Source of the DNA: Rhodosorus marinus CCMP1338
Lineage: Eukaryota > Plantae > Rhodophyta
DNA length: 64,000 bases
Reading direction: 5' to 3'
NCBI GenBank assembly: GCA_029953675.1
Contig: JAMWBK010000003.1
Coordinates: 558,001-622,000, forward strand
Shown here: piece after piece, positions 11,381-25,100 of the stretch
How positions within the stretch are numbered: the first letter of the stretch is position 1
Layout of the letters: the number at the start of each line of letters is the position of its first letter
Made by a program: the position numbers and the translations under genes
The notes under the pieces: generated by a model
What the model was told of the DNA's origin: nothing
The model's database searches: none
What the model saw: only the letters and a program-made list of their open reading frames with translations

Positions 11381-13151
11381 TCAAATCCAATCACCACCGT
11401 TCATATACTGATCTTCGCAGTCGAAGTTTCTCGTAAGGGTAATCTTTCCCCGTCGACGCCGGCCGTCCCCTCCACTCATGTCATCAGAACTTAGCAGCGG
11501 ACTTTCAGGCTCATGCCTCGGGCTGAAGCTCGCATGGTTCGGGGGTGTAAATCCCTTGTTCGATTGCGTTGGCGGAGTGAATCCCTTATTAATACCCATC
11601 ATGAAGATTCCGCTCATGCCACCTCCAGATGGTCTTTTCTTCGTTTGATTGTCGTATTTGCTTATGAACGAAGCCGGTGAGGAAGGGCTCACATCCGGAA
11701 CGGATCCATATCTAGCATCTTTGTCACCCGACCCGGTAGACGCCGTTTCTCTGTGGTCGCCTTGGCCGATCGGCAGGCCCCCGGTGAGGAACATCAGCTT
11801 CGCATGACGCACCATTTCCTGTACGGCTCTCAACTGATCACTCACGGGATCCTCATTCACGAACGTCAGGCCTTTCTCCTCACCCGCGATCCAAGGATGC
11901 GCCAGAGCTTCCACGGCCGTCATTCGCGCCTCTGCATCTGGCTCGAGCAGTTTGCTTATGAAGTCTCTACTACGGGATGAATACGATTTCCATTCACTAC
12001 CGTATGCATACTTCCCAGTTCGGATCTGAAGGAAAATAAACAGCACAGAAAGATCGATAAGATGGGAGCTCTGTTTTACAGCGCCAACTTGGGCCACTTA
12101 CCAGCCTCATGACCTTATTCGGAGACTCCGCCTCGAACGGAAACTTGCCCGTGACGCACTTGTACATGAGCACCCCAGCAGCCCACAAGTCCACACTGGC
12201 ACCGTACGGTTTCCTGTTTACTTGCTCTGGAGCAAGATACATCCAAGTACCTAGCATGGTCGATAGAGCATTGCTCATGTCACTCGCGTCCGGTATGATT
12301 GCCCCAAATCCAAAGTCTAGCAATTTTGCTCCCATCGGAAACGTTTCGAACTCGCATGCAATGTTCTCCAGCTTAATGTCTCTATGAACAATTCTCAGAG
12401 AATGCAGTGCCGCGAGTCCGTAGACAATTTCGTTCATAATCATCCGTAGTTGGGACTCAGTCACTTGAGGTCTCTTCGCCAGACACTCGTCCAGAGTACC
12501 TGCTGTTAAATACTCCATCACAACATATACCTTGTCCTCCGAATCAAATATATCAATCCTACATCAATTCCACGCGAGTTTTTCAGAAAAATTATGCTGC
12601 AACAACTTCATGCCAAGGGGGCTTGTGAACCATCCGTGACACTCTGAACACGGTTTCAGGACTTACGTTGACACGATCTGGGGGCTCCTGACAACCAGCA
12701 TAATAGCAGCCTCGCAGTGTAGTCGATGAATGCGTTCGGGTGAAAGGCCTTCCTTGCTCACAATCTTCACTGCGACCGTATCTCCCGTGCACTTACTCTT
12801 TGCTTTTCTCACGATGCCACTAGTGCCCTCGCCTATTACCTCGAGAAGCTCGTAGTAGTTTGTGAGCTCCCGTGTCGACGATTCCATCAACGCCTTAACC
12901 CAAATGTCAAAGGATTCAGCAGTTTCCGCAGTGAATAGAAGTTTCCATCTCGGAATATGCATGCGCAGCTTTTCTCTATGTACAAGGATCTCACAGTTCA
13001 GCATTGCACAGGACCAGTCAGGTTCATCATCCGGTCCCTTGTGCTTCGTCAACATGATCCCATTCAGACGAAAAAAGCGCCGTTTCCCGAACCGCCCTGA
13101 TTTCAACCATCCACTGCACTCCAGCGGAACGCCGTTTCTCAAACCCTGCAT
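11381..13151 (-). CDS. Ser/Thr protein kinase (CAMK-like) with N-terminal PH-like domain; exons 13151-12667, 12558-12102, 12025-11381 (528 aa)
   Basis: Kinase motifs IGEGTSG, VAVK, HRDIKLEN, DFG, YLAPE, DLWAAGV and RMTAVEALAHPW. The N-terminus has GWLK...KRRFF.L and LLF.AET.E....WV.AL, a PH-domain pattern. Introns are 12559-12666 and 12026-12101. An additional 5' exon cannot be excluded. Confidence 0.9.
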
Positions 13152-13562: not shown

Positions 13563-14923
13563 TTCCCATCCCTTTCCCATTTCCTCCTCCTTAAAACCGT
13601 CCAAACCCGTCCAAAAACGATCCTCGTCATCTGCTTTTTTTTCCAAAACCAGAAAAAGGAGAAAAAAACGCATAATGGTTTATGAATTAAAAAATGTCTC
13701 ATGGAAATCAAATTTTACACTATAAAAAACATATAGGAGAGACTCCCATCTAAATAAGATGGGAAACGCCAAGTCAAAGTGAACACGCGCATCGAGTTGA
13801 GGCTTTCCCATTTTGAGAGAGCTCAGCTACGCGAAATGACGTAATTACACGACTTAGCACATGCCACAGATTGGGGCCTTCGTAAATCTCTTTTTCTCAC
13901 CTCTCTTCTGTCGTTCTCTCTTTCTCAGCTATACTCGAGAAATCTATTGTTTTGTTTTTCGTGACAAAATAACGGGGATGCGCTCACTTTCTATATCTCT
14001 GTATTTTCCCAAATCTGATATATATTAGAAACTTTTGGTTTAAATGAGGTCGACTTTTTAGTTGACAAAAATACCTATAGGTTGGTTTTTATTCTAATAA
14101 TATATAATTCAACCGTGTTTTTCGTTGGGATTATATTTTCTATATTTAGAGTTTAGAAAAAAGAGATGGTGGCATCTCTGTTACCTCTTACCTGCGGCTG
14201 AGAGAAACAAATATATTCTCTTTATTTTGGTGCGTGGGGGTTGTGCAACAACTTCGTGATTGGACAAACTCTTCAGCACGTCAACGTGGGTTGGCAGGAA
14301 AACGAACTCTAATTTCCGGGGGTTAGGAAAATATTGTGAATTTTGACTGATGGTCACAAAAGTTTTATTATTCATCCGAAAAGAAAACAGTAAAAAGTTA
14401 AAATTAGCCCAATATCTATATCAATGACGTTTTTAATTCAATATTCTTTATTATATTGATTGATAATTGTTTTGGTCTTAGGGGTTGGACGTATCGCACA
14501 GGAAGGTGCAGATCTAAATGTCAGGGTATACCTAACAAGCGTTGAAATAAATAAGGAAAAGCAGAAATCCTTCATCAACATCGGATTGGATTGGGTTGGT
14601 CCATTATACGAATTAAGAATTGGCACGTGTGTCGACGGTCTAATCAGCAACCGAAACGGTGGAATATTGCGCAAAAAAGTGATATATTATAAAAGCGCGT
14701 TGTTGCGGGGAAAAGCGACATTAAATATTTATGATAGTAATAATATATATTTATATCTGCGTCATTACTGTTGATAGAGATATCGGATGGACGTGTCGGA
14801 AACGGACAATGGGAATGGAGATTGGTGCAGCGGTTCGGAGTTGGGGATGGTGACTGCCACACCCGATGGGAGGCTGAGGCTTAGGCACACAAAAATTTCG
14901 ATGTGTTTCTGGAGAGAGGATTG

Positions 14924-17137
14924 ATGGACCAGTGTTTTAATTTTGTTCCGGTCGGTTTGGTATTGGACAAGAGATGGAGTCGGAGGAGGGTATGCCGCGG
15001 ACGGGGTGCTCAGTCGAAAACGGACCCCCCGATGGAGGATAACGTCAGCAGAAAGGAGGATGGTTTGAATTTTGGGTTGAGTGGTCTGAGCATTGAGGAT
15101 CAGGAGTCTCTTCTGAAGCTTCACAATGAGGTGGCTTGGTTCACGCTGGACAACGAACAGGCCGGTGAATTTGCGGATTCGCTTCTGGGGACGACCGGAC
15201 CTCCAAAGCCGGATTTGAAGTACATTCGAACGGTATTTGGAGAAGATCGTGTGCTGAAATGGATACGCACAGAGACGTTTCGAAAGCTGGAAACAGATGA
15301 CGCTTCGATGATCACATCACCGGAGCAAGGAGACTTACTGCGCCTGCTCATTCAGGCCACAGGTGCTGAAAAGGTTTTGGATGTTGGAACATTCACAGGA
15401 TACTCATCCACTTGCATGGCGATGACCTCGGAAAGAATCTCCGTGACGACGATGGACTGTGAGGAGGGAGCTCCTCAACTGGTCGCGCGAGAGGCGTGGA
15501 AACGAGCTGGGGTTGAATCGCAGATTAATTTCATTGCAGGAGACGCCCTTTCGAGCATGAAAACCATGCGAAAGGAGAGCTTTGACCTGGTCTTCATCGA
15601 TGCGGATAAGGAGAGGTACGAGGAGTATTACGAAGTGGCATTGGTAAGGCATGACCAACAACCCCGAACAGATTTCTGGAGATCACTGACCCCGAAGAAC
15701 CGTCGCAGTGCGCACGCGATCTGTCTCACGATCTGTCTTGAATGCATCTACTGACAGGATCTTGTTCGTGACGGTGGTGTCGTAATCATCGACGACAGCC
15801 TCTGGAGTGGAAGGCTGTCTGACCCGACTGTTCAGGACCCGTCCACCAATGCAATCAGGAGAGCCAATCTCCGTATCTCCGGCGATTTGTCGGTCGAAAG
15901 CGCGTTAGTACCAATTCATGACGGCATGACCGTTGCCGTGAAGAGAAGAGAACATCCCGTTTCCTCCACCGCATTTGCAGGTCACGTTGTATCGGTTGAG
16001 GGCAACATCGCGGTGGGGAAGACCACGCTTCTGAACACCATATCCCGGGATCCTGAACTATCGGGAGAAGTTCCCGTTCAGATCTTCTACGAAAACCCAA
16101 CTGAGTCATTTCTCAAACTTTTCTACGAAGATCCAGAGCGGTAGGGTGAAGCTCGCCACTGGTGTCTCCGATCTGGATCACGGGCGAGACAAGCATAGAG
16201 CCTTAGAGCTGATCTTCCCGACTGCTTTCCTCCCAAAACGCAGATACGGCTTTGGGTTCCAAATTCATATGCTTCAAACCTGTCAGAATCTTGTCAACTC
16301 AGCTGGAGAGCATGCTCAGAAGGCGGGTCTCAGCTTCGTTGATCGATCTCCGTGGGGTAACTCCTGTTTCGCGGACTGCAACTATCGTCTTGGCCGTCTT
16401 TCTGAAGGTAACAACCCACAACCCACCAGAGCTCAACAGAGGAAGGCACGGACGGATTGCGTTTTAGATACTTAGCAAAGATGATGGGTCTCTTCTCCCT
16501 GCCTAGACGAGTATGCAGTTTATCGGACCATGCTCAATTCACAGCCACTGGGTTTGGATGTGCTCGTGTACCTGGACGTGCCTCCCGAGATATCCCTGGC
16601 GAGGTGCGTACAACGGGGTGTCAACGCAGAGGCGGCTGTTGAGCTGGACTACCTGGAGAGGCTTGATAGCTCGCACTTCGAGATGCTCTGCGAGACTATC
16701 ATCTCGAAGAGATTGCCGGTTCTAGTCATCGATTGGAGAAGCTTCGCACCCATTAAAATGGTGCTGTTATGCCCCGAACGAACACATAGGAGAAGGACGG
16801 CACGGCGTTTGAGTGGAATTCTGACTTGAACACAACATCATCCGTTTCCTAGGTTCTGGAGCAGATTTACAACTTTTTCAAGCACGATCAAGAACCGGCG
16901 AGGCTCAGGAACGAGAGAGGCTCGAAGGACAGTCTTGCGCTTGGAGCTGAAGAAATCATCGAGCTCGAACGTTCGCTCAAAGTCGACGGAAGGCTGGACT
17001 TGCAGGATATTGTGAATCCAACGAGAATACAGAGAATTCCTACTGGCACGGGACCTGTCTACGCTTCGTTTAAGAGACTCGTCTTGTACCTCCTCGCAAA
17101 CAAGTACGAAGTGGTTTTCGAAGCGGACTCGACTTGA
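14924..17137 (+). CDS. Fusion protein: transit-peptide-like N-terminus + class I SAM-dependent O-methyltransferase (CCoAOMT/Methyltransf_3-like) + deoxynucleoside kinase (dNK) domain; exons 14924-15643, 15758-16140, 16244-16407, 16507-16760, 16853-17137 (601 aa)
   Basis: OMT motifs: VLDVGTFTGYS, FDLVFIDADKERYEEYY, GGVVIIDDSLWSG and VPIHDGMT. dNK motifs: VSVEGNIAVGKTT, FYEDPERYGFGFQ, DRS and LVYLDVPPE.SL.R...RG...E...LDYLERL. Four GT-AG introns give a phase-consistent 1806-nt CDS. Confidence 0.9.
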
Positions 17138-17793: not shown

Positions 17794-19265
17794 TTAGAAG
17801 AGGTCGTCCTCCACCTCAACCTGAGCGATTCCACCAACGATCTCGTTCAGCTCGTTTGTGATTCGGCCTTGTCGTTCTCTGTTAATCATAAGGCTGAGAT
17901 CGTGCATCAGATCCTTCGCGTTATCCTCTGCTGCTTGCATGGCGGTTAACCTCGCCGCTAGCTCGCTCGCAGAGCTCTCCCGAACCGCTCGAAGTATGTG
18001 TTGACGGAGGTAGAGTGGCGTCATCGCACAGAGGATCTCAATCGGGTGTTGTTCAAACGAAACTTTCTGCGAAAACCTAGAATCCAGCTCCCTTTTGGTC
18101 GGGATAGTTGGGCAATAAGAGATCGTGAGCTTGAGGTCGCCTTGACAGTCCACAACAAGGAACAGGATCTTTGATCTTACTTGTCCGGGTCGCAGTGTTT
18201 CCTCTCGACATCAAAACCGTGGTCGCTTGGAACCAGTTGAAAGATCTCGTCCTCGTCCCACTCAAAACCAAGAGGAGTCAGCGGTAGGAGAGTTCTGATG
18301 CTTGGTTTGGAGGCGAGCATTGACTGAAATCGGGTGTAGACAAGCTCGACTCTGTCGACCTCATCGGAGACAAAGTCGATGAGCGATTCCTCGGCAAGTT
18401 TGAGGGATAGGTCCGGAAGACCTCTGCCAGTACCGAGCAGGAAGGCGTTCACGATGAGAAGATGCGGATAGTTTCTTCTGAAGAATCGTTCCGTTAGACG
18501 ACCCACACAGCACAGCTCCACTTCCATTCCTAGTTGAGTAAGGTCCTCAATTCGGCGCCTTGCAGTGGTAAAAACGAGGCGATTGTAGACTCCGCAGAGT
18601 CCTCGATCACCAGCGACAACGATCAGAAGCACTCTTCGCGTCGCTCCGGGATCCTGCAACGCTCTATGGATCTTCATTCAGCACATGAAAGCAGGCCAAC
18701 GATCAGAAATCACGAACCCAACTGTAGTCAAACCGTCTTGACTGGAGCAAGCACATCTCTTACTTCCGCCTGGAGAAAACGAGCCATACCTTTCGAAGCA
18801 TGTACTGATCCACAGTATCGATCTCTCCACCCAATCTGATCGCTTCATCTGTTAGCTTTTCAAAACTTTTCCCGTCACTGTTCAATCGATGCAATACAGT
18901 TCCTAGCACCTGCGTCAGAGCGGTGAAAAAACTGTCAACTACGACTCGTCCTGTGGGGTGGGTTTAATTCCATCGAGTGGTTAACCCAAAAATCAAGAAG
19001 GAGGTCTAACCTGTTGCAAGCTCTGCACAAAAGGTCTGGATTTCAATGCGGCCTCAGAAGTTCTCTTTATCCTAGCCGCCGCAACCAGTCTCATCGCCCC
19101 AGTCACCTCCAGCGCCGTTTTCACGGTACTCATCCTCCGTCGCAGTTCATAGAGCTTCCCTCCGGCCATCAAAGGGCCAGGTCGTCTCCTCCGAACCAAG
19201 TTCGATGGTTGCCTACCAATCCACCCGGATGGATGACACACAAAACATCCATCCCGGTCCTTCAT
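17794..19265 (-). CDS. atpC: Plastid-type F1 ATP synthase gamma subunit, highly divergent; exons 19265-19011, 18909-18790, 18653-18181, 18076-17794 (376 aa)
   Basis: AMRLVAAA, GDRGLCG, VELVYTRF, LLPLTP..(cyanobacterial/plastid insert)..DEIF.L, FEQ.P, SASELAARLTAMQAA.DNA and RQGRITNELNEIVGG. The N-terminal extension resembles a transit peptide. Confidence 0.9.
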
Positions 19266-20034
19266 TCTCAATAGATACCTAAATCCTCAGATCAACCCGA
19301 ACCCAAGAAGTACAACAAAAAACGAAAAAAAAGAAGCTCCCCGAACACGAGCTGAGCAATAACAACAAAAACTTCACTAATCCTTCCCCTTCATCTCTGA
19401 GATCAACCCCTCAGTCTCAACCCTTCCTCTTATAGACCCTTCCCACTATCCCTCCACCCTATCCAGCCAAATGTCTATCAATGGCCACAGTGTCATCCAA
19501 AACCCAGCTCAACCAGCGAACAGAACCCTGTTGTACCTCAACCAGAGCATCCTTGCGTCGTATCAAAAGGTTCCTAGATCGCAGCTACTTCAAGCGGAAA
19601 AGTCTAAACATTCACTCTTAAGATCTCTTTACCCTCCACACCCTCTCGCTCACCCAACCTTCCTCCCCCTCCGCTTCCATCTCGGGCAATACCAGAATGG
19701 ATATTTACCAAAATGGATCGCTCTACCCTCCCCCTCATATAAATCAAGTCCCCTCTTTCTTGATTTATTTTCTTTAATTATTCAGTATTTATCCTTTTTG
19801 GAATCCAGGGAGTACCCCTCCATCTACATATTTGCTTTTTGGTGGGTCTCCGGCCATGTTCGAGACAAGCGATAAGCCAAAATGGTCTAATTTTGGATGG
19901 TTGATGACGACGGTCATCAAATTTTGATCTGTTTTTTGAGGATTTTTTCGGGTTTGGGGAGGATGTTGGCATCAGCGTACAAACCATTGTTTTCGGGTTT
20001 ATTTTCGTCTGAGAACTTTGAAAGAGATTTGCTT

Positions 20035-21149: not shown

Positions 21150-22130
21150 CTACCTCCGCTCTAGAGGGTTCAATTCTGTACAAAGTCGCAAGAGTGATTC
21201 CCTCGGTGCAGTCCCAAGGCGAGAATTGTTATTCCCAAAACTGTTCGGCGCTCTTAAAACAGGAAGACCTTGATCAGGAGCAAGAGGTATCTTTTCCATT
21301 CCCGAAGGAAACGGAGGTAGCAGGTTCGACGCCGCTGGGAGAGCGCTTGAAGCGAAGAGAGCGCTTGTTGGCGGGAGTGCGATAGATTCCGCCAGTGCGT
21401 TGGATGACGGAAGTGCGCTAGAGGCCAAAAGAGTGCTAGATGATGGTAACAAGCCATCGTGCCTCTCAAATTGTGGTGATTTCCTCGAGGTCGGAATTCG
21501 TTCCGCTGGATAGAGGTTTGAAATATTGGGCAGGCTGTTGTACAATTCGGGCGCTAGAGGTGACAGCGCCAGTTGGCACGCACTGTCCGGGGCATTCAAC
21601 TCCAGTGACGCAGGAGAATCAGCAAAGTACTTCCCACTAGCGTCGACACCGTTCCGAAACCTCAAGTGCGCCGTTCGTTGCTGCCTGGCAACCTTCAGTT
21701 CACGTGAATCGACTGAGCATTTTGACGACATCGAGTCGTTCTTAAGGAACGGATCTGTAGAAGGTTCATTTGGAATCCCAGGAATGCGATTCTCCTCCTT
21801 CAGCAAGCGTCCTTCTTCCTGCCGCACAAGTCCATCAATTCCATTCCCCCGAGAACTCCACCCCTTATCTGTTGCCTCTTTTGAGCTGACTTCTACCTCT
21901 CGATGGGTTTGCATATGACTCTTTAAGGAAGACCTCCATTTGAACACGCGGTCGCAGCCTTTCTCCGTACACCTGAATGGGTTGCTCCCCGTATGAACTC
22001 TTCTATGATTATCTACGCAGTACCGATACTTAAACATTTTGTTGCATATCTCACAAGCAAACCTCTCCCCAACCCTTGCAGAGGAAGAGGGCTTTTTCCT
22101 CTTCAGCCCAACTTCCTTCGCAGGCCCCAT
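21150..22130 (-). CDS. C2H2 zinc-finger transcription factor (2 fingers, N-terminal), intronless
   Basis: FACEICNKMF...NHRRVHTGSNPFRCTEKGCDRVFKWRSSLKSHMQTH, a basic NLS (KRKK) and a Ser/Pro-rich tail. First ATG at 22130. Confidence 0.9.
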   Translation of the reverse strand: MGPAKEVGLKRKKPSSSARVGERFACEICNKMFKYRYCVDNHRRVHTGSNPFRCTEKGCDRVFKWRSSLKSHMQTHREVEVSSKEATDKGWSSRGNGIDGLVRQEEGRLLKEENRIPGIPNEPSTDPFLKNDSMSSKCSVDSRELKVARQQRTAHLRFRNGVDASGKYFADSPASLELNAPDSACQLALSPLAPELYNSLPNISNLYPAERIPTSRKSPQFERHDGLLPSSSTLLASSALPSSNALAESIALPPTSALFASSALPAASNLLPPFPSGMEKIPLAPDQGLPVLRAPNSFGNNNSRLGTAPRESLLRLCTELNPLERR

Positions 22131-25100
22131 ACTCCCTAAAAAAGCGCTCACTAAAGCCGTTCACGGACAGTCCGTCGGCATGAAAGCCATCCGCCAACCC
22201 TCCAAAATCCCGAACCTAACAACCCTACGATCCTTTCCGCCTAACACCCGGAACTTCCTCAGCCCCCCAACACTGCTCACCCAAATACTCACACTCAAGA
22301 TCTACACAATACCTTCCCACGACCAAATGTCCATTCGCTTGCACAATCCCAAAAGTTTTGCACGTCACCCGGAACAAATACCGAGGACGATAAGAACAAA
22401 ACAATTTAATTCCAATTCGGTTACAAAAAAAAAAGGGTTCTACTTCCCGACGTAAAAATCCCCCCGCCCTCGACTAACTTGCTCGCCCCAAAATCCTGCT
22501 CACCCGCCAACGACTTAACTTCCCCCCCTCCCCCGCTCGACAATCAGCTATCACCTACGTATGCTCTCTAAAATACTCAGCTCTGCCAAAGCTTTGCCCT
22601 CTCAACCCCTCAACCAGAACGACACTCAGGAGTGACCAACGAAACAGAAGAAAAAGAAGAAAGAGATAAAACCCGTTGACCCATTCTCTCTCCCCCCCTC
22701 CTCCCCTTCCCTCCTCTCTATTCCTCCTGAATACAAAAAAAAATAACCCATTCGCGAGCTTCCACAAAAAACCAGGTCCACTTTTGCGATCCATTCTCTC
22801 TCCCTCTTCAGTCCCGGATAGCGAGTGTATCGAACAGTTTTGAAAGGAAAACTTCCCCCCGTAAATCACTTTCTATATGTACCGACAAAAGGTTTTGGAT
22901 CCAAAATAATTAGAGAAAAATCAAAAATTTGAAAAACTTGCTGACCAAGTAAACATGTCTTTACATATTGTCCACGTGGGAGCGACTCTTCACCATCGGA
23001 CGGTGTGGAGGTGGGGGAGGGGGGGTGAAAAGTTGGTTGAAATTTTTATTGTGCGATGGACTAGGAGGAGAAAGCTGTTTTTTTTTGTTTTGGACCCTAG
23101 AAAACAAAAATTCGAGTCAATAAACTAACTCGTTTGGAAAGTAATTATTGGAGGACTTTTGGAAAAATTTCTGGACATTGAGTACCAAAAGACTCTCGAA
23201 CGGTTTCTGTTTTACAGAAGTTGGAAAATTAAACGCGAGCAATGGTTTTGCTACAACAGTCTCCCCTCATGGCCACTTGGTGCGCTATTTCTTTCACAAT
23301 ATGAAGAATATAGTGAACTAACCAGGGTGGGTGTTTTTCATATTTTTTCGGGAATAGGACGATTGCACTTCAAATGCCACCCACGCAAGCAATGGGAGGG
23401 GGAGCGGGGGGGTAGTGGATATTCGGTCGCATCATGAGCGGGGGAAGGTTCGTCATTTTGAGTAGACCAACAACGCTGGGCTAAATTGATCATCAGCAGG
23501 GGCTTGGTGGGGAAAATTCAGATGTGGTTATATTTTCTTGAATTTGAATCTTGGGGATTCTGAAAAAATTGCAACCCACGTCCGTATCTTCAGTATGCCG
23601 ACAGATGGACGTGGAACATGACCTCGCCCTTGACTCTGGGGACTCCAATAATGTTGAATTTGAAACAATTTGTCCATTCGACGGAACTGGGGGAGGGTAC
23701 AACACGTTGCTTTTGGGTTTTTTTATTTTCATGATAGGTTCGTGGAATGCTCATGGCATTTTGATATGACGTACTCTTCCGGGTAGGATACTGACATAAG
23801 AGGGACGAAACTGCACATAAATTTAGCAAAACTCAAGAAATTAGCCAGTAACACGCACGCTGATATAGGGGTGGCTGACATATGCTCCCCGGGGGGGTCT
23901 TTGCGACCATATGCATCTTTGGGTTTTGTTTTTTGTTAAATAAAATTCCCTCGTAGAGCAGAACAACACTCCTCTCAAGAAAAAAATTGCTCGGTCCGGT
24001 TGAGCTTCTTTTTTCGAAACCCCAGCTTCCCCCCTAGCTAATAATCTGAATATTTTATTGCGTATAAATGAAAACTGAAGTGCGACATACGACAGGAACG
24101 TAATGCTTTGTCTGCTTCTGATAGATTCTATTTCCCGTGAAGTTGACTAATTTGTTTTGCGAATTCAACGGAAATCCAATAACGGCCGGTTTTTTTTCCC
24201 CAATAAGAGGCACGACTCATGCCAACTACAAGCTCCATCTTTTATGCATCTTATCTTGTATTCCACCTCATGGTCTAGAATATACAAAAAAAATCCAATC
24301 ACAATTTTGCCCTGGTTGTTCTTGTTTGCTTAGCGTGGAGGCGGAGGAGGACAGATCGGAGAATTCGATGACCTGTTTGCATTTCATTTGAAGACCAGGC
24401 AATGAATTAGATAGAAAAGTTAAGGGGAGGCGTGGAAGTGTGTGAAATAGTGAAAGATAATATCTAATCTAGTATAAAAAGAGCGCGCAGCCTTTTTCTT
24501 TTTTTTGCAAGGGGGCCAGTCCCACCTCCTCCAAGAATTGAGGAAAAAAATATTTATATATGAATGGTTTTGTGAGCTCGCATTTTTCGAGGCACTTGAA
24601 TAGAGGGAGCCGGATGACATTGATTGCTATTCTTGCACAAGAAGGTGGGGGGGGGGGATGGCGAAACAACCAGTGCTTCCAAGCTTTTGTAAGCCACCGA
24701 ATTAGAAAAGAAAATGATTCAAGACTTCCGAAATAGACGCGATCGATTTTCCAATTGGTCGATCAATATACAAGTACATTTATCCAAGCGGTGAGAGCTG
24801 GGCTGAAGTTTCCGTGCGCAGTGTGGTTTGCGGTTAGTCCAAAGAGGGCACTGGGCAATCTGACGTCCTCATATAATATTTCTTCAAGGGTAAAAGGACG
24901 GAACTTTTGCATGTAAAAGAGCTGGTTCAACCAGACCGCCCCGCTGAGTAGAAAGAATCCATCCGATCTCTACTCCCACAACTGTAGGTCTCTTGCTCCT
25001 TCACGCCTTCATCTTGTGCTAAGAGGAGAGTGCGCTTCCCATGCTGCCAAAGCGATTGGAACTTTCTAGGAACGGGAAGAGGATCAGCTTATGGCCTACG

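What the first reader, a model, noticed from the sequence alone, without database searches (positions are those of the whole stretch)
14924..17137. O-methyltransferase fused in-frame to a deoxynucleoside kinase, with a plastid-like presequence
Seen in sequence: the end of a CCoAOMT-type methyltransferase (VPIHDGMTVAVKR) runs into a dNK P-loop (VSVEGNIAVGKTT) within one exon (15758-16140). There is no stop or intron at the junction, so the fusion is not a splicing artefact. Both domains keep their core motifs. The OMT metal site reads IIDD rather than the usual DN. The dNK base-recognition segment reads DRSPWGNSCF, with Asn where human dCK has Asp133 (by-eye alignment). Established: this OMT family includes nucleic-acid modifiers such as Bacillus TrmR (tRNA 5-hydroxyuridine methyltransferase), and dNKs phosphorylate nucleosides. 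Inference: this may be a bifunctional organellar enzyme that methylates and salvages or phosphorylates a modified nucleoside or small phenolic. I know no described protein with this architecture, but I could not search.
Basis: partly seen in the sequence, partly recalled or inferred. Interest (0 to 1): 0.85.

Follow-up and report, generated by a model that had tools for sequence, protein, structure and literature searches.

The report
Red-algal methyltransferase–deoxynucleoside kinase fusion protein
This is a real nuclear gene of the red alga Rhodosorus marinus that joins a metal-dependent O-methyltransferase, a deoxynucleoside kinase and a small unknown end-module in one protein; the fusion is conserved across distant red algae but has never been studied, so its substrate is unknown.

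Summary
A five-exon gene on the + strand (14924..17137, GT-AG introns of 92-114 nt) encodes 601 aa. Pfam finds Methyltransf_3 at aa 107-302 (4e-45) and dNK at aa 318-511 (6e-32). The junction lies inside exon 2.

The protein is 100% identical to NCBI 'hypothetical protein NDN08_002924 [Rhodosorus marinus]', which starts at Met37. Transcripts of a sister strain show introns 2-4 spliced as modelled and carry both domains on one mRNA.

The same layout (OMT, dNK, about 85-aa C-terminal module) occurs in three Galdieria species, Porphyridium purpureum, Rhodella violacea and unnamed relatives. No other such fusion was found among 1.84 billion cluster representatives or in the literature searched.

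Every member has Asp-Asp where about 99% of the nearest standalone OMTs have Asp-Asn. Every member with the kinase part has Asn where dCK has Asp133 and a small residue where dCK has Arg104, a pair whose mutation lets dCK accept dT and dU.

The N-terminus is disordered, has a Phe-based motif, and resembles the presequence of the neighbouring chloroplast ATP synthase gamma gene.

It is most likely a working bifunctional organellar enzyme. A shared nucleoside substrate is inferred, not shown. I class it as a new variant of known kinds, of moderate interest.

The parts
14924..17137 (+). Whole CDS: five exons 14924-15643, 15758-16140, 16244-16407, 16507-16760, 16853-17137 (stop TGA 17135-17137). 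Introns 15644-15757, 16141-16243, 16408-16506, 16761-16852.
   Evidence: Manual splicing gives an open 601-aa frame with GT..AG introns. It is 100% identical to the NCBI R. marinus protein over 565 aa. Sister-strain transcripts are spliced at the same exon 2/3, 3/4 and 4/5 junctions, and intron-3- and intron-4-retained isoforms also exist.
14924..15031 (+). Candidate plastid presequence, aa 1-36 (MDQCFNFVPVGLVLDKRWSRRRVCRGRGAQSKTDPP). The NCBI model omits it and starts at Met37 (15032).
   Evidence: It starts at the first ATG after an in-frame stop; it has 8 basic and 3 acidic residues, with F5 and F7. AF2 pLDDT is below 50 for aa 1-34 and 37-55. The Porphyridium orthologue starts MGKGAAFVAVHG. 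Rhodophyte plastid targeting uses an F-based motif at the very N-terminus (PMC7038456). The neighbouring chloroplast-type AtpC starts MKDRDGCFVCHPSG...RRRR.
15032..15241 (+). Acidic helical N-terminal region, aa 37-106, partly conserved in the closest orthologues (…LLKLHNE…FADSLLGTTGPP…).
   Evidence: Alignment A1. AF2 helices at 57-74 and 77-91 with pLDDT 53-65. No Pfam hit.
15242..15943 (+). Class I cation-dependent SAM O-methyltransferase domain, aa 107-302, interrupted by intron 1.
   Evidence: PF01596 4.4e-45. SafC 5lhm 2e-44. Foldseek TM 0.86 to SafC 5log. pLDDT is 89-98 over most of the domain.
15599..15610 (+). D226-A-D-K229: first metal ligand and catalytic lysine ('FIDADKE').
   Evidence: Aligned to the DADK of SafC, SynOMT, LiOMT and others. 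D and K are invariant in the family.
15791..15796 (+). D252-D253: metal site reading Asp-Asp instead of the usual Asp-Asn.
   Evidence: All five best PDB relatives have DN. Census: all fusion members have DD, against 236 DN and 3 DD among the nearest standalone OMTs. All 80 closest bacterial genomic loci have DN.
15944..15988 (+). Short inter-domain linker, aa 303-317, inside exon 2.
   Evidence: Linker length varies from about 15 to about 70 aa among orthologues.
15989..16864 (+). Non-TK1-type deoxyribonucleoside kinase domain, aa 318-511, interrupted by introns 2-4.
   Evidence: PF01712 6.3e-32. Giardia dAK 8puu 2.4e-20 and human dCK 5e-17. pLDDT 85-97.
15995..16027 (+). P-loop VEGNIAVGKTT (K328).
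   Evidence: E321, G322, N323, I324, G327 and K328 are invariant or nearly so in the family.
16338..16373 (+). VDRSPWGNSCFA: DRS motif (R402), N407 in place of dCK Asp133 / Giardia dAK Asp114, and the stacking residue F410.
   Evidence: HMMER alignments. D, R, S, G, N and F are invariant in 7 family members. Residue roles are taken from PMC11662666.
16260..16283 (+). Helix QIHMLQTC: Q374 (base-binding Gln) and C381 where dCK has Arg104 and Giardia dAK has Arg91.
   Evidence: Ungapped register in the 8puu alignment. The family has C, S or A here. The gapped dCK alignments are ambiguous by one position.
16880..17134 (+). C-terminal module of about 85 aa (aa 517-601), beta-alpha-beta-alpha-beta, ending in the conserved Y-x-[AS]-[FY]-K-R motif. 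No known relative.
   Evidence: AF2 block-mean pLDDT is 76-95 in the full model and 79.6 when folded alone. No Pfam hit. No Foldseek PDB hit better than E=0.18. Y, K and R are invariant in the 7 sequences of A4; the Porphyridium orthologue, not in A4, reads Y-S-A-F-S-A.

Best explanation
This is the Rhodosorus marinus orthologue of an old, red-alga-specific, three-module enzyme. It is probably imported into an organelle, most likely the plastid.

Shown:
- One mRNA and one reading frame encode four parts in order: a disordered basic N-terminus with a Phe motif; a class I metal- and SAM-dependent O-methyltransferase domain; a non-TK1-type deoxyribonucleoside kinase domain; and an approximately 85-aa alpha/beta module with no known relatives.
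- This order is conserved in four red-algal classes: Cyanidiophyceae, Porphyridiophyceae, Rhodellophyceae and Stylonematophyceae.

Inferred from conserved residues:
- Both enzymes work. The OMT keeps the SAM motif, the DADK aspartate and lysine, and a third acidic ligand.
- The kinase keeps the P-loop lysine, the catalytic Glu, the Tyr/Glu pair that reads the 3'-OH and excludes ribose, the base-stacking Phe pair, the Gln, the DRS arginine and two lid arginines.

Inferred mechanism:
- The kinase makes deoxynucleoside 5'-monophosphates with ATP for organelle DNA precursor salvage.
- Its base pocket lacks the Arg/Asp pair of dCK (Cys381/Asn407 instead). That should admit thymidine- or deoxyuridine-type, 5-substituted pyrimidines.
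- The OMT methylates a hydroxyl of a substrate that chelates its all-aspartate (D-D-D) metal site.

Both active sites carry changes found only in the fusion clade, and no split version was found. I therefore think the two domains act on one nucleoside-type substrate. The most specific guess is a 5-hydroxylated pyrimidine deoxynucleoside.

Likelihoods: real conserved fusion about 0.97; both domains catalytic about 0.75; plastid targeting about 0.55; shared nucleoside substrate about 0.4. The confidence given is for that last, full statement.
For: - Gene model and domains.
- Identity to the deposited R. marinus protein.
- Sister-strain MMETSP transcripts span OMT end, linker, dNK and C-terminus, with introns 2-4 removed exactly as modelled.
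- Genomic fragments of relatives keep the same exon 2 limits and intron 1 position (P0044, P0018).
- An exhaustive HMMER scan of 1.84e9 representatives found the fusion in Rhodosorus-like, Galdieria, Porphyridium and Rhodella clusters and in a few unnamed contigs. G. partita was added.
- All else in the top 150 is standalone OMTs, plus tandem OMT-OMT and tandem dNK proteins.
- DD is universal in the fusions and present in about 1% of standalone relatives.
- Invariant kinase residues, mapped onto Giardia dAK contacts.
- Mutation of dCK R104/D133 extends its specificity to dT, dU and 5-substituted dU (PMC3851323).
- AF2: mean pLDDT 82.4, pTM 0.65, with the C-terminal module ordered.
- F-based rhodophyte plastid motif, and the similar presequence on the adjacent chloroplast-type AtpC.
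- Other Methyltransf_3 fusions join what look like consecutive pathway steps: rhodanese (TrhO-like)+OMT and DHQ-synthase+OMT. That reading rests on my own knowledge of those pathways.
Against: - No activity, localisation or substrate data exist.
- The OMT is much closer to small-molecule catechol OMTs (SafC 153 bits) than to the only nucleobase-directed member, TrmR (51 bits). A phenolic or other non-nucleoside substrate is therefore at least as natural.
- The linker varies in length, and I could not inspect inter-domain geometry because no PAE or coordinates are available.
- Bacterial neighbourhoods give almost no OMT-dNK linkage. Only 3 of 80 loci have it, all in one gammaproteobacterial NUDIX-OMT-pcnB-folK-dNK-panBC arrangement.
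- My simple NJ trees do not recover a single OMT clade (2 of 100 bootstraps). They only weakly support the dNK clade (28 of 100).
- The NCBI model starts at Met37, which would remove the presequence.
- The third lid arginine is missing in Rhodosorus (V461).
- The register at dCK Arg104 is ambiguous by one residue in the gapped alignments.
Confidence: 0.4

Rival explanations
1. Both domains are active but functionally independent. The fusion only ensures co-expression and co-import of a housekeeping organellar deoxynucleoside kinase and an unrelated small-molecule (catechol or enediol type) O-methyltransferase.
For: The OMT domain is most similar to promiscuous bacterial catechol OMTs. The linker is variable and poorly conserved. 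Green-lineage dNKs also carry an unrelated N-terminal module (helix-hairpin-helix), so this kinase tolerates diverse fusions. There is no meaningful bacterial OMT-dNK synteny.
Against: The fusion persists across four deeply diverged red-algal classes with no split copies detected. Clade-specific changes occur in both active sites. A conserved extra C-terminal module travels with the pair.
Confidence: 0.3
2. One domain is a non-catalytic sensor or scaffold. For example, the dNK fold may bind a nucleotide or nucleoside to regulate the OMT (as the dNK-fold subunit NDUFA10 is structural in complex I). Alternatively, the OMT fold may bind SAM to regulate the kinase.
For: The dNK fold has a known non-enzymatic use: NDUFA10 appears among the PDB hits. 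The metal site is altered (DD) and the base-contact Asp is lost. One member has Glu for the base-binding Gln and Asp for the catalytic Glu (P0017).
Against: The P-loop Lys, catalytic acid, DRS Arg, lid Args, 3'-OH Tyr/Glu pair, SAM motif and DADK Lys are invariant or nearly so across the family. That pattern is not expected for a pseudoenzyme.
Confidence: 0.15
3. Artefact: two neighbouring genes wrongly read as one, or a lineage-specific accidental read-through with no function.
For: None beyond the general frequency of merged gene models. One G. sulphuraria model (944 aa) does merge an upstream gene.
Against: The junction lies inside one exon with no stop. Transcripts cover it. Uninterrupted ORFs carry both domains in independent assemblies of five genera.
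Confidence: 0.02

Closest known systems
Bacterial and cyanobacterial class I cation-dependent catechol O-methyltransferases (Myxococcus xanthus SafC 5lhm/5log, Synechocystis SynOMT 3cbg, Leptospira LiOMT 2hnk; Pfam PF01596)
   Same: About 35-45% identity over the whole approximately 210-aa domain. Same fold (TM 0.86). Same SAM motif, DADK metal Asp and catalytic Lys.
   Different: Those enzymes are standalone proteins of about 220 aa with an Asp-Asp-Asn metal triad. Here the third ligand is Asp, there is an N-terminal extension of about 100 aa, and the domain is fused to a kinase.
Non-TK1-like deoxyribonucleoside kinases (Giardia intestinalis dAK 8PUU, human dCK/dGK, Drosophila dNK; Pfam PF01712)
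   Same: P-loop, catalytic Glu, DRS/ERS arginine, Tyr/Glu 3'-OH clamp, Phe stacking pair, base-binding Gln and lid arginines.
   Different: Only about 25-32% identity. Asn replaces the conserved base-contact Asp (dCK D133, dAK D114). Cys/Ser/Ala replaces the Arg (dCK R104, dAK R91). The domain carries an extra C-terminal module and an N-terminal OMT.
Green-lineage (plant and green-algal) organellar-type dNK proteins of about 400-690 aa
   Same: Nuclear-encoded, N-terminally extended, multi-module dNK proteins of Archaeplastida.
   Different: Their extra module gives weak helix-hairpin-helix matches, below Pfam cut-offs, not an OMT. They keep ERS...SDR (Asp present). No Methyltransf_3 signal was found even at E<=1.
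Bacillus subtilis TrmR (YrrM), tRNA 5-hydroxyuridine O-methyltransferase (8k1f, 5zw3)
   Same: Same Pfam family, and the only member known to methylate a nucleobase hydroxyl. Rhodanese(TrhO-like)+OMT fusions exist in the databases.
   Different: Weak similarity (51 and 48 bits, against 153 for SafC). No NCBIfam equivalog hit. No evidence here for tRNA binding.
Metal-dependent sugar O-methyltransferases (MycE/ThnM1 type)
   Same: Mg2+ held by aspartates chelates vicinal sugar hydroxyls for methylation (PMC9275233). This shows that an all-carboxylate metal site can serve sugar diols.
   Different: It is a different family. No sequence relationship was tested or claimed. This is only a chemical precedent for one speculative substrate class, the nucleoside sugar hydroxyls.

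Membership tests
Pfam PF01596 Methyltransf_3 (class I cation-dependent SAM O-methyltransferases) | Profile match above the curated cut-off over the full domain | tested here: met
   153.9 bits against a cut-off of 22; profile positions 7-203 of 204.
Pfam PF01596 Methyltransf_3 | Rossmann-type SAM-MT fold of the CCoAOMT/COMT class | tested here: met
   The AF2 model gives Foldseek TM 0.83-0.88 to SafC, SynOMT, LiOMT and COMTD1.
Pfam PF01596 Methyltransf_3 | SAM-binding motif I and catalytic Lys of the D-A-D-K motif | tested here: met
   LDVGTFTGYS and FIDADKE align with solved enzymes. They are invariant in the family.
Pfam PF01596 Methyltransf_3 | Asp-Asp-Asn divalent-metal triad | tested here: not met
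   The third ligand is Asp (D253), giving Asp-Asp-Asp. All fusion members have DD, against 236 DN and 3 DD among standalone relatives. Metal binding is probably retained but was not tested.
Pfam PF01596 Methyltransf_3 | SAM-dependent O-methyl transfer activity | not testable with these tools
   Needs an enzyme assay.
Plant caffeoyl-CoA O-methyltransferase sensu stricto | Closest similarity to CCoAOMT enzymes | tested here: not met
   1sui 76 bits and 5kva 72 bits, against 153 bits for bacterial SafC.
TrmR (tRNA ho5U34 methyltransferase) | Specific similarity to TrmR, or an equivalog model hit | tested here: not met
   8k1f 51 bits and 5zw3 48 bits. No NCBIfam OMT equivalog above cut-off.
Pfam PF01712 dNK (non-TK1-like deoxyribonucleoside kinases) | Profile match above the curated cut-off | tested here: met
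   111.4 bits against a cut-off of 27; profile positions 1-193 of 203.
Pfam PF01712 dNK | P-loop GxxxxGK[ST], catalytic Glu after strand 2, and the (E/D)RS arginine | tested here: met
   GNIAVGKT, FYE352NP aligned to the Giardia dAK YYEP, and D401-R402-S403 as in the Giardia dAK DRS.
Pfam PF01712 dNK | Deoxyribose 3'-OH clamp (Tyr + Glu) and base-binding Gln / Phe stack | tested here: met
   Y363, E464, Q374, F362 and F410 align to Giardia dAK Y73, E174, Q84, F72 and F117.
Pfam PF01712 dNK | Conserved base-contact Asp (dCK D133 / dGK D147 / dAK D114) and Arg (dCK R104) | tested here: not met
   N407 and C381. N is invariant in the family, and the Arg position is C, S or A. Drosophila dNK and TK2 also lack this pair (my own knowledge), so membership is not excluded, but a different specificity is implied.
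Pfam PF01712 dNK | ATP-dependent 5'-phosphorylation of deoxynucleosides | not testable with these tools
   Needs an enzyme assay or complementation.
Rhodophyte F-type plastid transit peptide | Phe (or other aromatic) at the very N-terminus of a basic, unstructured presequence | tested here: met
   F5 and F7; 8 basic and 3 acidic residues in 36 aa. pLDDT below 50. Motif definition from PMC7038456. It is met only if ATG 14924 is the start codon.
Rhodophyte F-type plastid transit peptide | Actual import and cleavage | not testable with these tools
   No targeting predictor or localisation data were available.

The most novel reading that the evidence does not exclude
Red algae have a previously unknown organellar route in which one enzyme both O-methylates and 5'-phosphorylates a hydroxylated pyrimidine deoxynucleoside, for example turning 5-hydroxy-dU or 5-hydroxy-dC into a 5-methoxy nucleotide. 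This could be a 'sanitising salvage' of oxidised DNA precursors in a ROS-rich plastid. It could instead be the entry step to a so-far undetected modified base in organelle DNA. The unknown C-terminal module would mediate oligomerisation or substrate hand-over.
Probability: 0.12. Interest if true: 0.8.

Novelty: new variant of a known kind. Interest (0 to 1): 0.5.

Why it matters
Both halves belong to well-known enzyme families. Their combination is not described in the literature I could search. It has apparently been kept since the divergence of the Cyanidiophyceae from the other red algae. It also comes with clade-specific changes in both active sites and with an extra module of unassigned fold.

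That pattern is what a 'Rosetta stone' fusion marking an unrecognised pathway would look like. If the two domains share a nucleoside substrate, the protein would reveal a new type of nucleotide salvage or modification in plastids. It would also provide a kinase with unusual base specificity and a methyltransferase with an all-carboxylate metal site. If they do not share a substrate, it is still the probable organellar dNK of these algae and a useful marker of red-algal gene content.

The finding also corrects annotations: start codon choice in R. marinus, the name 'MdmC' in Porphyridium, and partial or merged models in Galdieria.

Tried and rejected
1. **Gene-model artefact.** Rejected by transcripts and orthologues.
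2. **Plant dNK N-terminal extension as a degenerate OMT**, which would make the fusion ancestral to Archaeplastida. Rejected. Pfam at E<=1 shows only weak helix-hairpin-helix signals and no Methyltransf_3.
3. **Known fold or family for the C-terminal module.** There are no Pfam hits and the best Foldseek PDB match is E=0.18. It stays unassigned.
4. **Bacterial operon support for OMT-dNK coupling.** Among the 80 closest bacterial OMT loci, only 3 have a dNK within 2.5 kb. All 3 lie in one gammaproteobacterial housekeeping cluster (NUDIX-OMT-pcnB-folK-dNK-panB-panC) and all have DN. This is not convincing.
5. **Domain phylogenies** (MAFFT, Kimura distance, NJ, 100 bootstraps; my own script).
   - The fusion dNK domains form a clade, but with 28% support.
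   - The fusion OMT domains are not recovered as a clade (2%), because they sit in an unresolved radiation of bacterial OMTs.
   - The result is inconclusive, and no ML program was available.
6. **Profile word-index search with the full-length alignment.** It was swamped by bacterial OMTs and added no fusion members.
7. **Whether the GC-rich metagenomic DD-type OMT P0004 continues into a dNK.** Only a P-loop-like 'IQGNMGAGK' is present before the contig ends, and tblastn found no dNK. Undecided.
8. **Standalone red-algal orthologues among the extended OMT hits.** None could be identified from the names available.
9. **Literature.** No paper combines dNK and O-methyltransferase as a fusion or treats red-algal dNKs.
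Full report
**Observation**

The stretch 14924-17137 on the + strand is a eukaryotic gene. Three-frame translation and splice-site inspection give five exons: 14924-15643, 15758-16140, 16244-16407, 16507-16760 and 16853-17137. The four introns are GT..AG and 92-114 nt long. The open CDS is 1806 nt and encodes 601 aa.

Exon 1 ends at 15643. My first attempt, ending it at 15646, added a spurious Val. ATG 14924 is the first in-frame ATG after an upstream stop.

Pfam places Methyltransf_3 at aa 107-302 (4.4e-45, 153.9 bits) and dNK at aa 318-511 (6.3e-32, 111.4 bits). The end of the OMT, a 13-aa linker and the kinase P-loop all lie inside exon 2 with no stop codon.

**Identity of the window**

The protein is 100% identical over 565 aa to NCBI 'hypothetical protein NDN08_002924 [Rhodosorus marinus]'. 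UniRef names it 'Deoxynucleoside kinase domain-containing protein'. The window is therefore nuclear DNA of the stylonematophycean red alga R. marinus. The deposited model starts at Met37 (15032).

**Is the fusion real?**

- A cluster of MMETSP transcripts, 91-92% identical and so from a sister strain, includes P0172. It runs MTVAVKRREH...P-loop...C-terminus and is spliced exactly at my exon 2/3, 3/4 and 4/5 junctions.
- P0170 and P0174 are intron-3- and intron-4-retained isoforms of the same gene.
- P0172 starts at the first Met after the in-frame stop of intron 1. This fits an intron-1-retained or 5'-partial transcript.
- Genomic fragments of 59-63%-identical relatives show an ORF with the same ends as exon 2 (P0044) and read-through at the same intron-1 position (P0018).
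- Uninterrupted ORFs with both domains occur on independent contigs (L001, L002).

**Distribution**

An exhaustive HMMER scan of 1.84 billion cluster representatives returned the fusion in a small number of clusters:

- the Rhodosorus-like set;
- an unnamed MMETSP species (P0002/P0162, 600 aa, 'complete');
- Galdieria yellowstonensis, G. sulphuraria and G. partita;
- Porphyridium purpureum, annotated 'O-methyltransferase MdmC';
- Rhodella violacea (MMETSP0314);
- an AT-rich metagenomic relative (P0017).

Everything else in the top 150 is a standalone OMT of about 220 aa, plus tandem OMT-OMT proteins and a tandem dNK-dNK protein.

No bacterial, viral, green or animal fusion appeared. No member from Bangiophyceae, Florideophyceae or Cyanidioschyzon appeared either. 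I could not search eukaryotic genomes at the DNA level, so that absence is provisional.

No paper in the searchable library mentions such a fusion or red-algal dNKs.

**OMT domain**

The best solved relatives are bacterial and cyanobacterial cation-dependent catechol OMTs: SafC 2e-44, SynOMT 7e-37 and LiOMT 4e-35. Plant CCoAOMT (76 bits) and TrmR (51 bits) are much weaker. The AF2 model superposes on SafC with TM 0.86.

The SAM motif and the D-A-D-K metal Asp and catalytic Lys are intact. The third metal ligand is Asp instead of Asn.

This is a clade signature. Every fusion member has DD. Among the nearest standalone OMTs, 236 have DN and 3 have DD. All 80 closest bacterial genomic loci have DN.

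**Kinase domain**

The best solved relative is Giardia deoxyadenosine kinase 8PUU (2.4e-20), followed by human dCK (5e-17). I mapped the published Giardia dAK contacts (PMC11662666) through the alignment:

| Window residue | Giardia dAK | Role |
|---|---|---|
| K328 | K43 | phosphate |
| E352 | catalytic Glu of YYEP | catalysis |
| F362 | F72 | base stacking |
| Y363 | Y73 | 3'-OH clamp; the residue modelled to clash with a 2'-OH |
| Q374 | Q84 | base |
| R402 | R109 | phosphate |
| F410 | F117 | base stacking |
| R459 | R169 | phosphate |
| E464 | E174 | 3'-OH clamp |

Most of these are invariant in seven family members.

Two contacts differ throughout the family. Asn407 replaces the base-contact Asp (dAK D114, dCK D133). 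Cys, Ser or Ala replaces the Arg (dAK R91, dCK R104). In dCK, changing R104 and D133 extends specificity to thymidine, deoxyuridine and 5-substituted dU (PMC3851323).

The inference is a working deoxyribonucleoside kinase with an uncharged, roomier pocket next to the pyrimidine 5-position. The register at R104 is ambiguous by one residue in the gapped dCK alignments. The ungapped Giardia alignment supports Cys381.

**C-terminal module and overall model**

After the kinase comes about 85 aa with the conserved terminal motif Y-x-[AS]-[FY]-K-R. It is present in every member that includes the C-terminus; the Porphyridium orthologue is divergent here (Y-S-A-F-S-A).

AF2 predicts a confident beta-alpha-beta-alpha-beta unit. 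The whole model has mean pLDDT 82.4 and pTM 0.65, and the module folded alone reaches 79.6. Pfam finds nothing. Foldseek against the PDB gives no hit better than E=0.18.

**Targeting**

Residues 1-34 and 37-55 are predicted disordered. The first 36 aa are basic and begin MDQCFNFVPV. Several orthologues also place a Phe close to the N-terminus:

- Porphyridium: MGKGAAFVAVHG
- G. partita: MNAFLYG
- P0017: MGFESV

Rhodophyte plastid targeting uses a Phe-based motif at the very N-terminus (PMC7038456).

The gene immediately downstream on the minus strand is a chloroplast-type ATP synthase gamma subunit (2.5e-57 to chloroplastic gamma, about 1e-21 to mitochondrial). Its predicted presequence, MKDRDGCFVCHPSGWIGRQPSNLVRRRRPGPLM, has the same style and length. 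This supports a plastid-type presequence if ATG 14924 is used, but it remains an inference.

**Mechanism**

- Shown: one mRNA, one ORF, three ordered modules, wide conservation, and clade-specific active-site changes.
- Inferred: both domains are catalytic. The kinase salvages deoxynucleosides in an organelle and probably accepts dT- or dU-like 5-substituted pyrimidines. The OMT methylates a metal-chelating hydroxyl substrate.

I favour functional coupling on a nucleoside-type substrate (about 0.4) for three reasons:

- The fusion has survived very deep divergences without detectable fission.
- Both active sites changed only in this clade.
- Other Methyltransf_3 fusions in the databases join what I take to be consecutive steps: rhodanese/TrhO-like+OMT and DHQ-synthase+OMT. 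That interpretation rests on my own knowledge.

The main rival (about 0.3) is two independent activities fused only for co-expression and co-import. It is supported by the OMT's similarity to catechol OMTs, the variable linker and the near-absence of bacterial OMT-dNK synteny. A sensor or pseudoenzyme role for one domain is less likely (about 0.15) given the invariant catalytic residues.

**Comparison and novelty**

Each domain passes the profile, fold and catalytic-motif tests of its family. Each fails one canonical feature: the DN metal pair, and the Asp/Arg base contacts.

The protein is not a TrmR and not a plant-type CCoAOMT. Green-lineage dNKs are also multi-module, but their extra module gives only weak helix-hairpin-helix matches, not an OMT.

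The architecture is deposited in databases but unstudied. I rate it a new variant of known kinds, with interest 0.5.

**Limits**

- No eukaryotic DNA collection, targeting predictor, PAE or coordinates, or ML phylogeny program was available.
- My NJ trees were inconclusive: dNK clade 28% bootstrap, OMT monophyly not recovered.

Noticed in passing
window 17794-19271, minus strand: The convergent downstream neighbour is a chloroplast-type ATP synthase gamma subunit (atpC-like) in at least three exons. Pfam ATP-synt hits are 7e-22 and 6e-28. The best PDB hits are chloroplastic gamma (2.5e-57), against about 1e-21 for mitochondrial. Its predicted presequence is MKDRDGCFVCHPSGWIGRQPSNLVRRRRPGPLM.
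   Followed up: partly
window 14787-14924, plus strand: A 45-codon upstream ORF in another frame ends with a TGA that overlaps the ATG at 14924 (TGATG). If the mRNA starts upstream of 14787, this could affect which start codon (14924 or 15032) is used.
   Followed up: no
window 11381-13151, minus strand: The divergent upstream neighbour is a multi-exon Ser/Thr protein kinase (Pkinase 2e-34) with an N-terminal region of about 100 aa before the kinase domain.
   Followed up: partly
window 21150-22151, minus strand: A 333-aa ORF with C2H2 zinc fingers (zf-C2H2 6e-07) and a long Ser/Pro/Leu-rich tail.
   Followed up: no
P0406, P0330, P0324, P0335, P0319 (green-lineage dNK proteins): Plant and green-algal dNK proteins of about 500-690 aa carry, between the transit-peptide-like N-terminus and the kinase, a segment with weak helix-hairpin-helix / BAF-like matches (below Pfam cut-offs). 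This hints at DNA or nucleoid association of the green-lineage kinase.
   Followed up: partly
L003 (JGI 3300007519 contig) and P0004, P0049, P0425: A GC-rich, intron-containing eukaryotic OMT from a metagenome also has the DD metal site. P0425 begins with a signal-peptide-like hydrophobic stretch. P0004 has a long low-complexity linker followed by 'IQGNMGAGK' before the contig ends. It may be the same fusion in an alga outside the named red algae.
   Followed up: partly
P0015, P0175, P0176 (Galdieria sulphuraria models): The deposited models of the G. sulphuraria orthologue disagree. One is a 497-aa partial called 'O-methyltransferase'. Another is a 944-aa model that merges the fusion with the upstream 351-aa gene Gasu_44840.
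   Followed up: no
P0006, P0009, P0010, P0012, P0013, P0005, P0007, P0021, P0028: Other multi-domain relatives turned up. They include DHQ-synthase-like+OMT, rhodanese/Rhodanese_C (TrhO-like)+OMT, GNAT+OMT, DinB+OMT, tandem OMT-OMT and tandem dNK-dNK proteins.
   Followed up: no
L019, L027, L055 (gammaproteobacterial MAG loci): The gene order is S4-domain protein, NUDIX hydrolase, OMT, pcnB, folK, dNK, panB, panC. This puts a standalone DN-type OMT about 2 kb upstream of a dNK in three related genomes.
   Followed up: partly
P0170, P0174 (MMETSP/JGI/Logan transcripts of a sister Rhodosorus strain): Intron-3-retained and intron-4-retained isoforms are assembled alongside the fully spliced form. 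Each would truncate the kinase domain.
   Followed up: no
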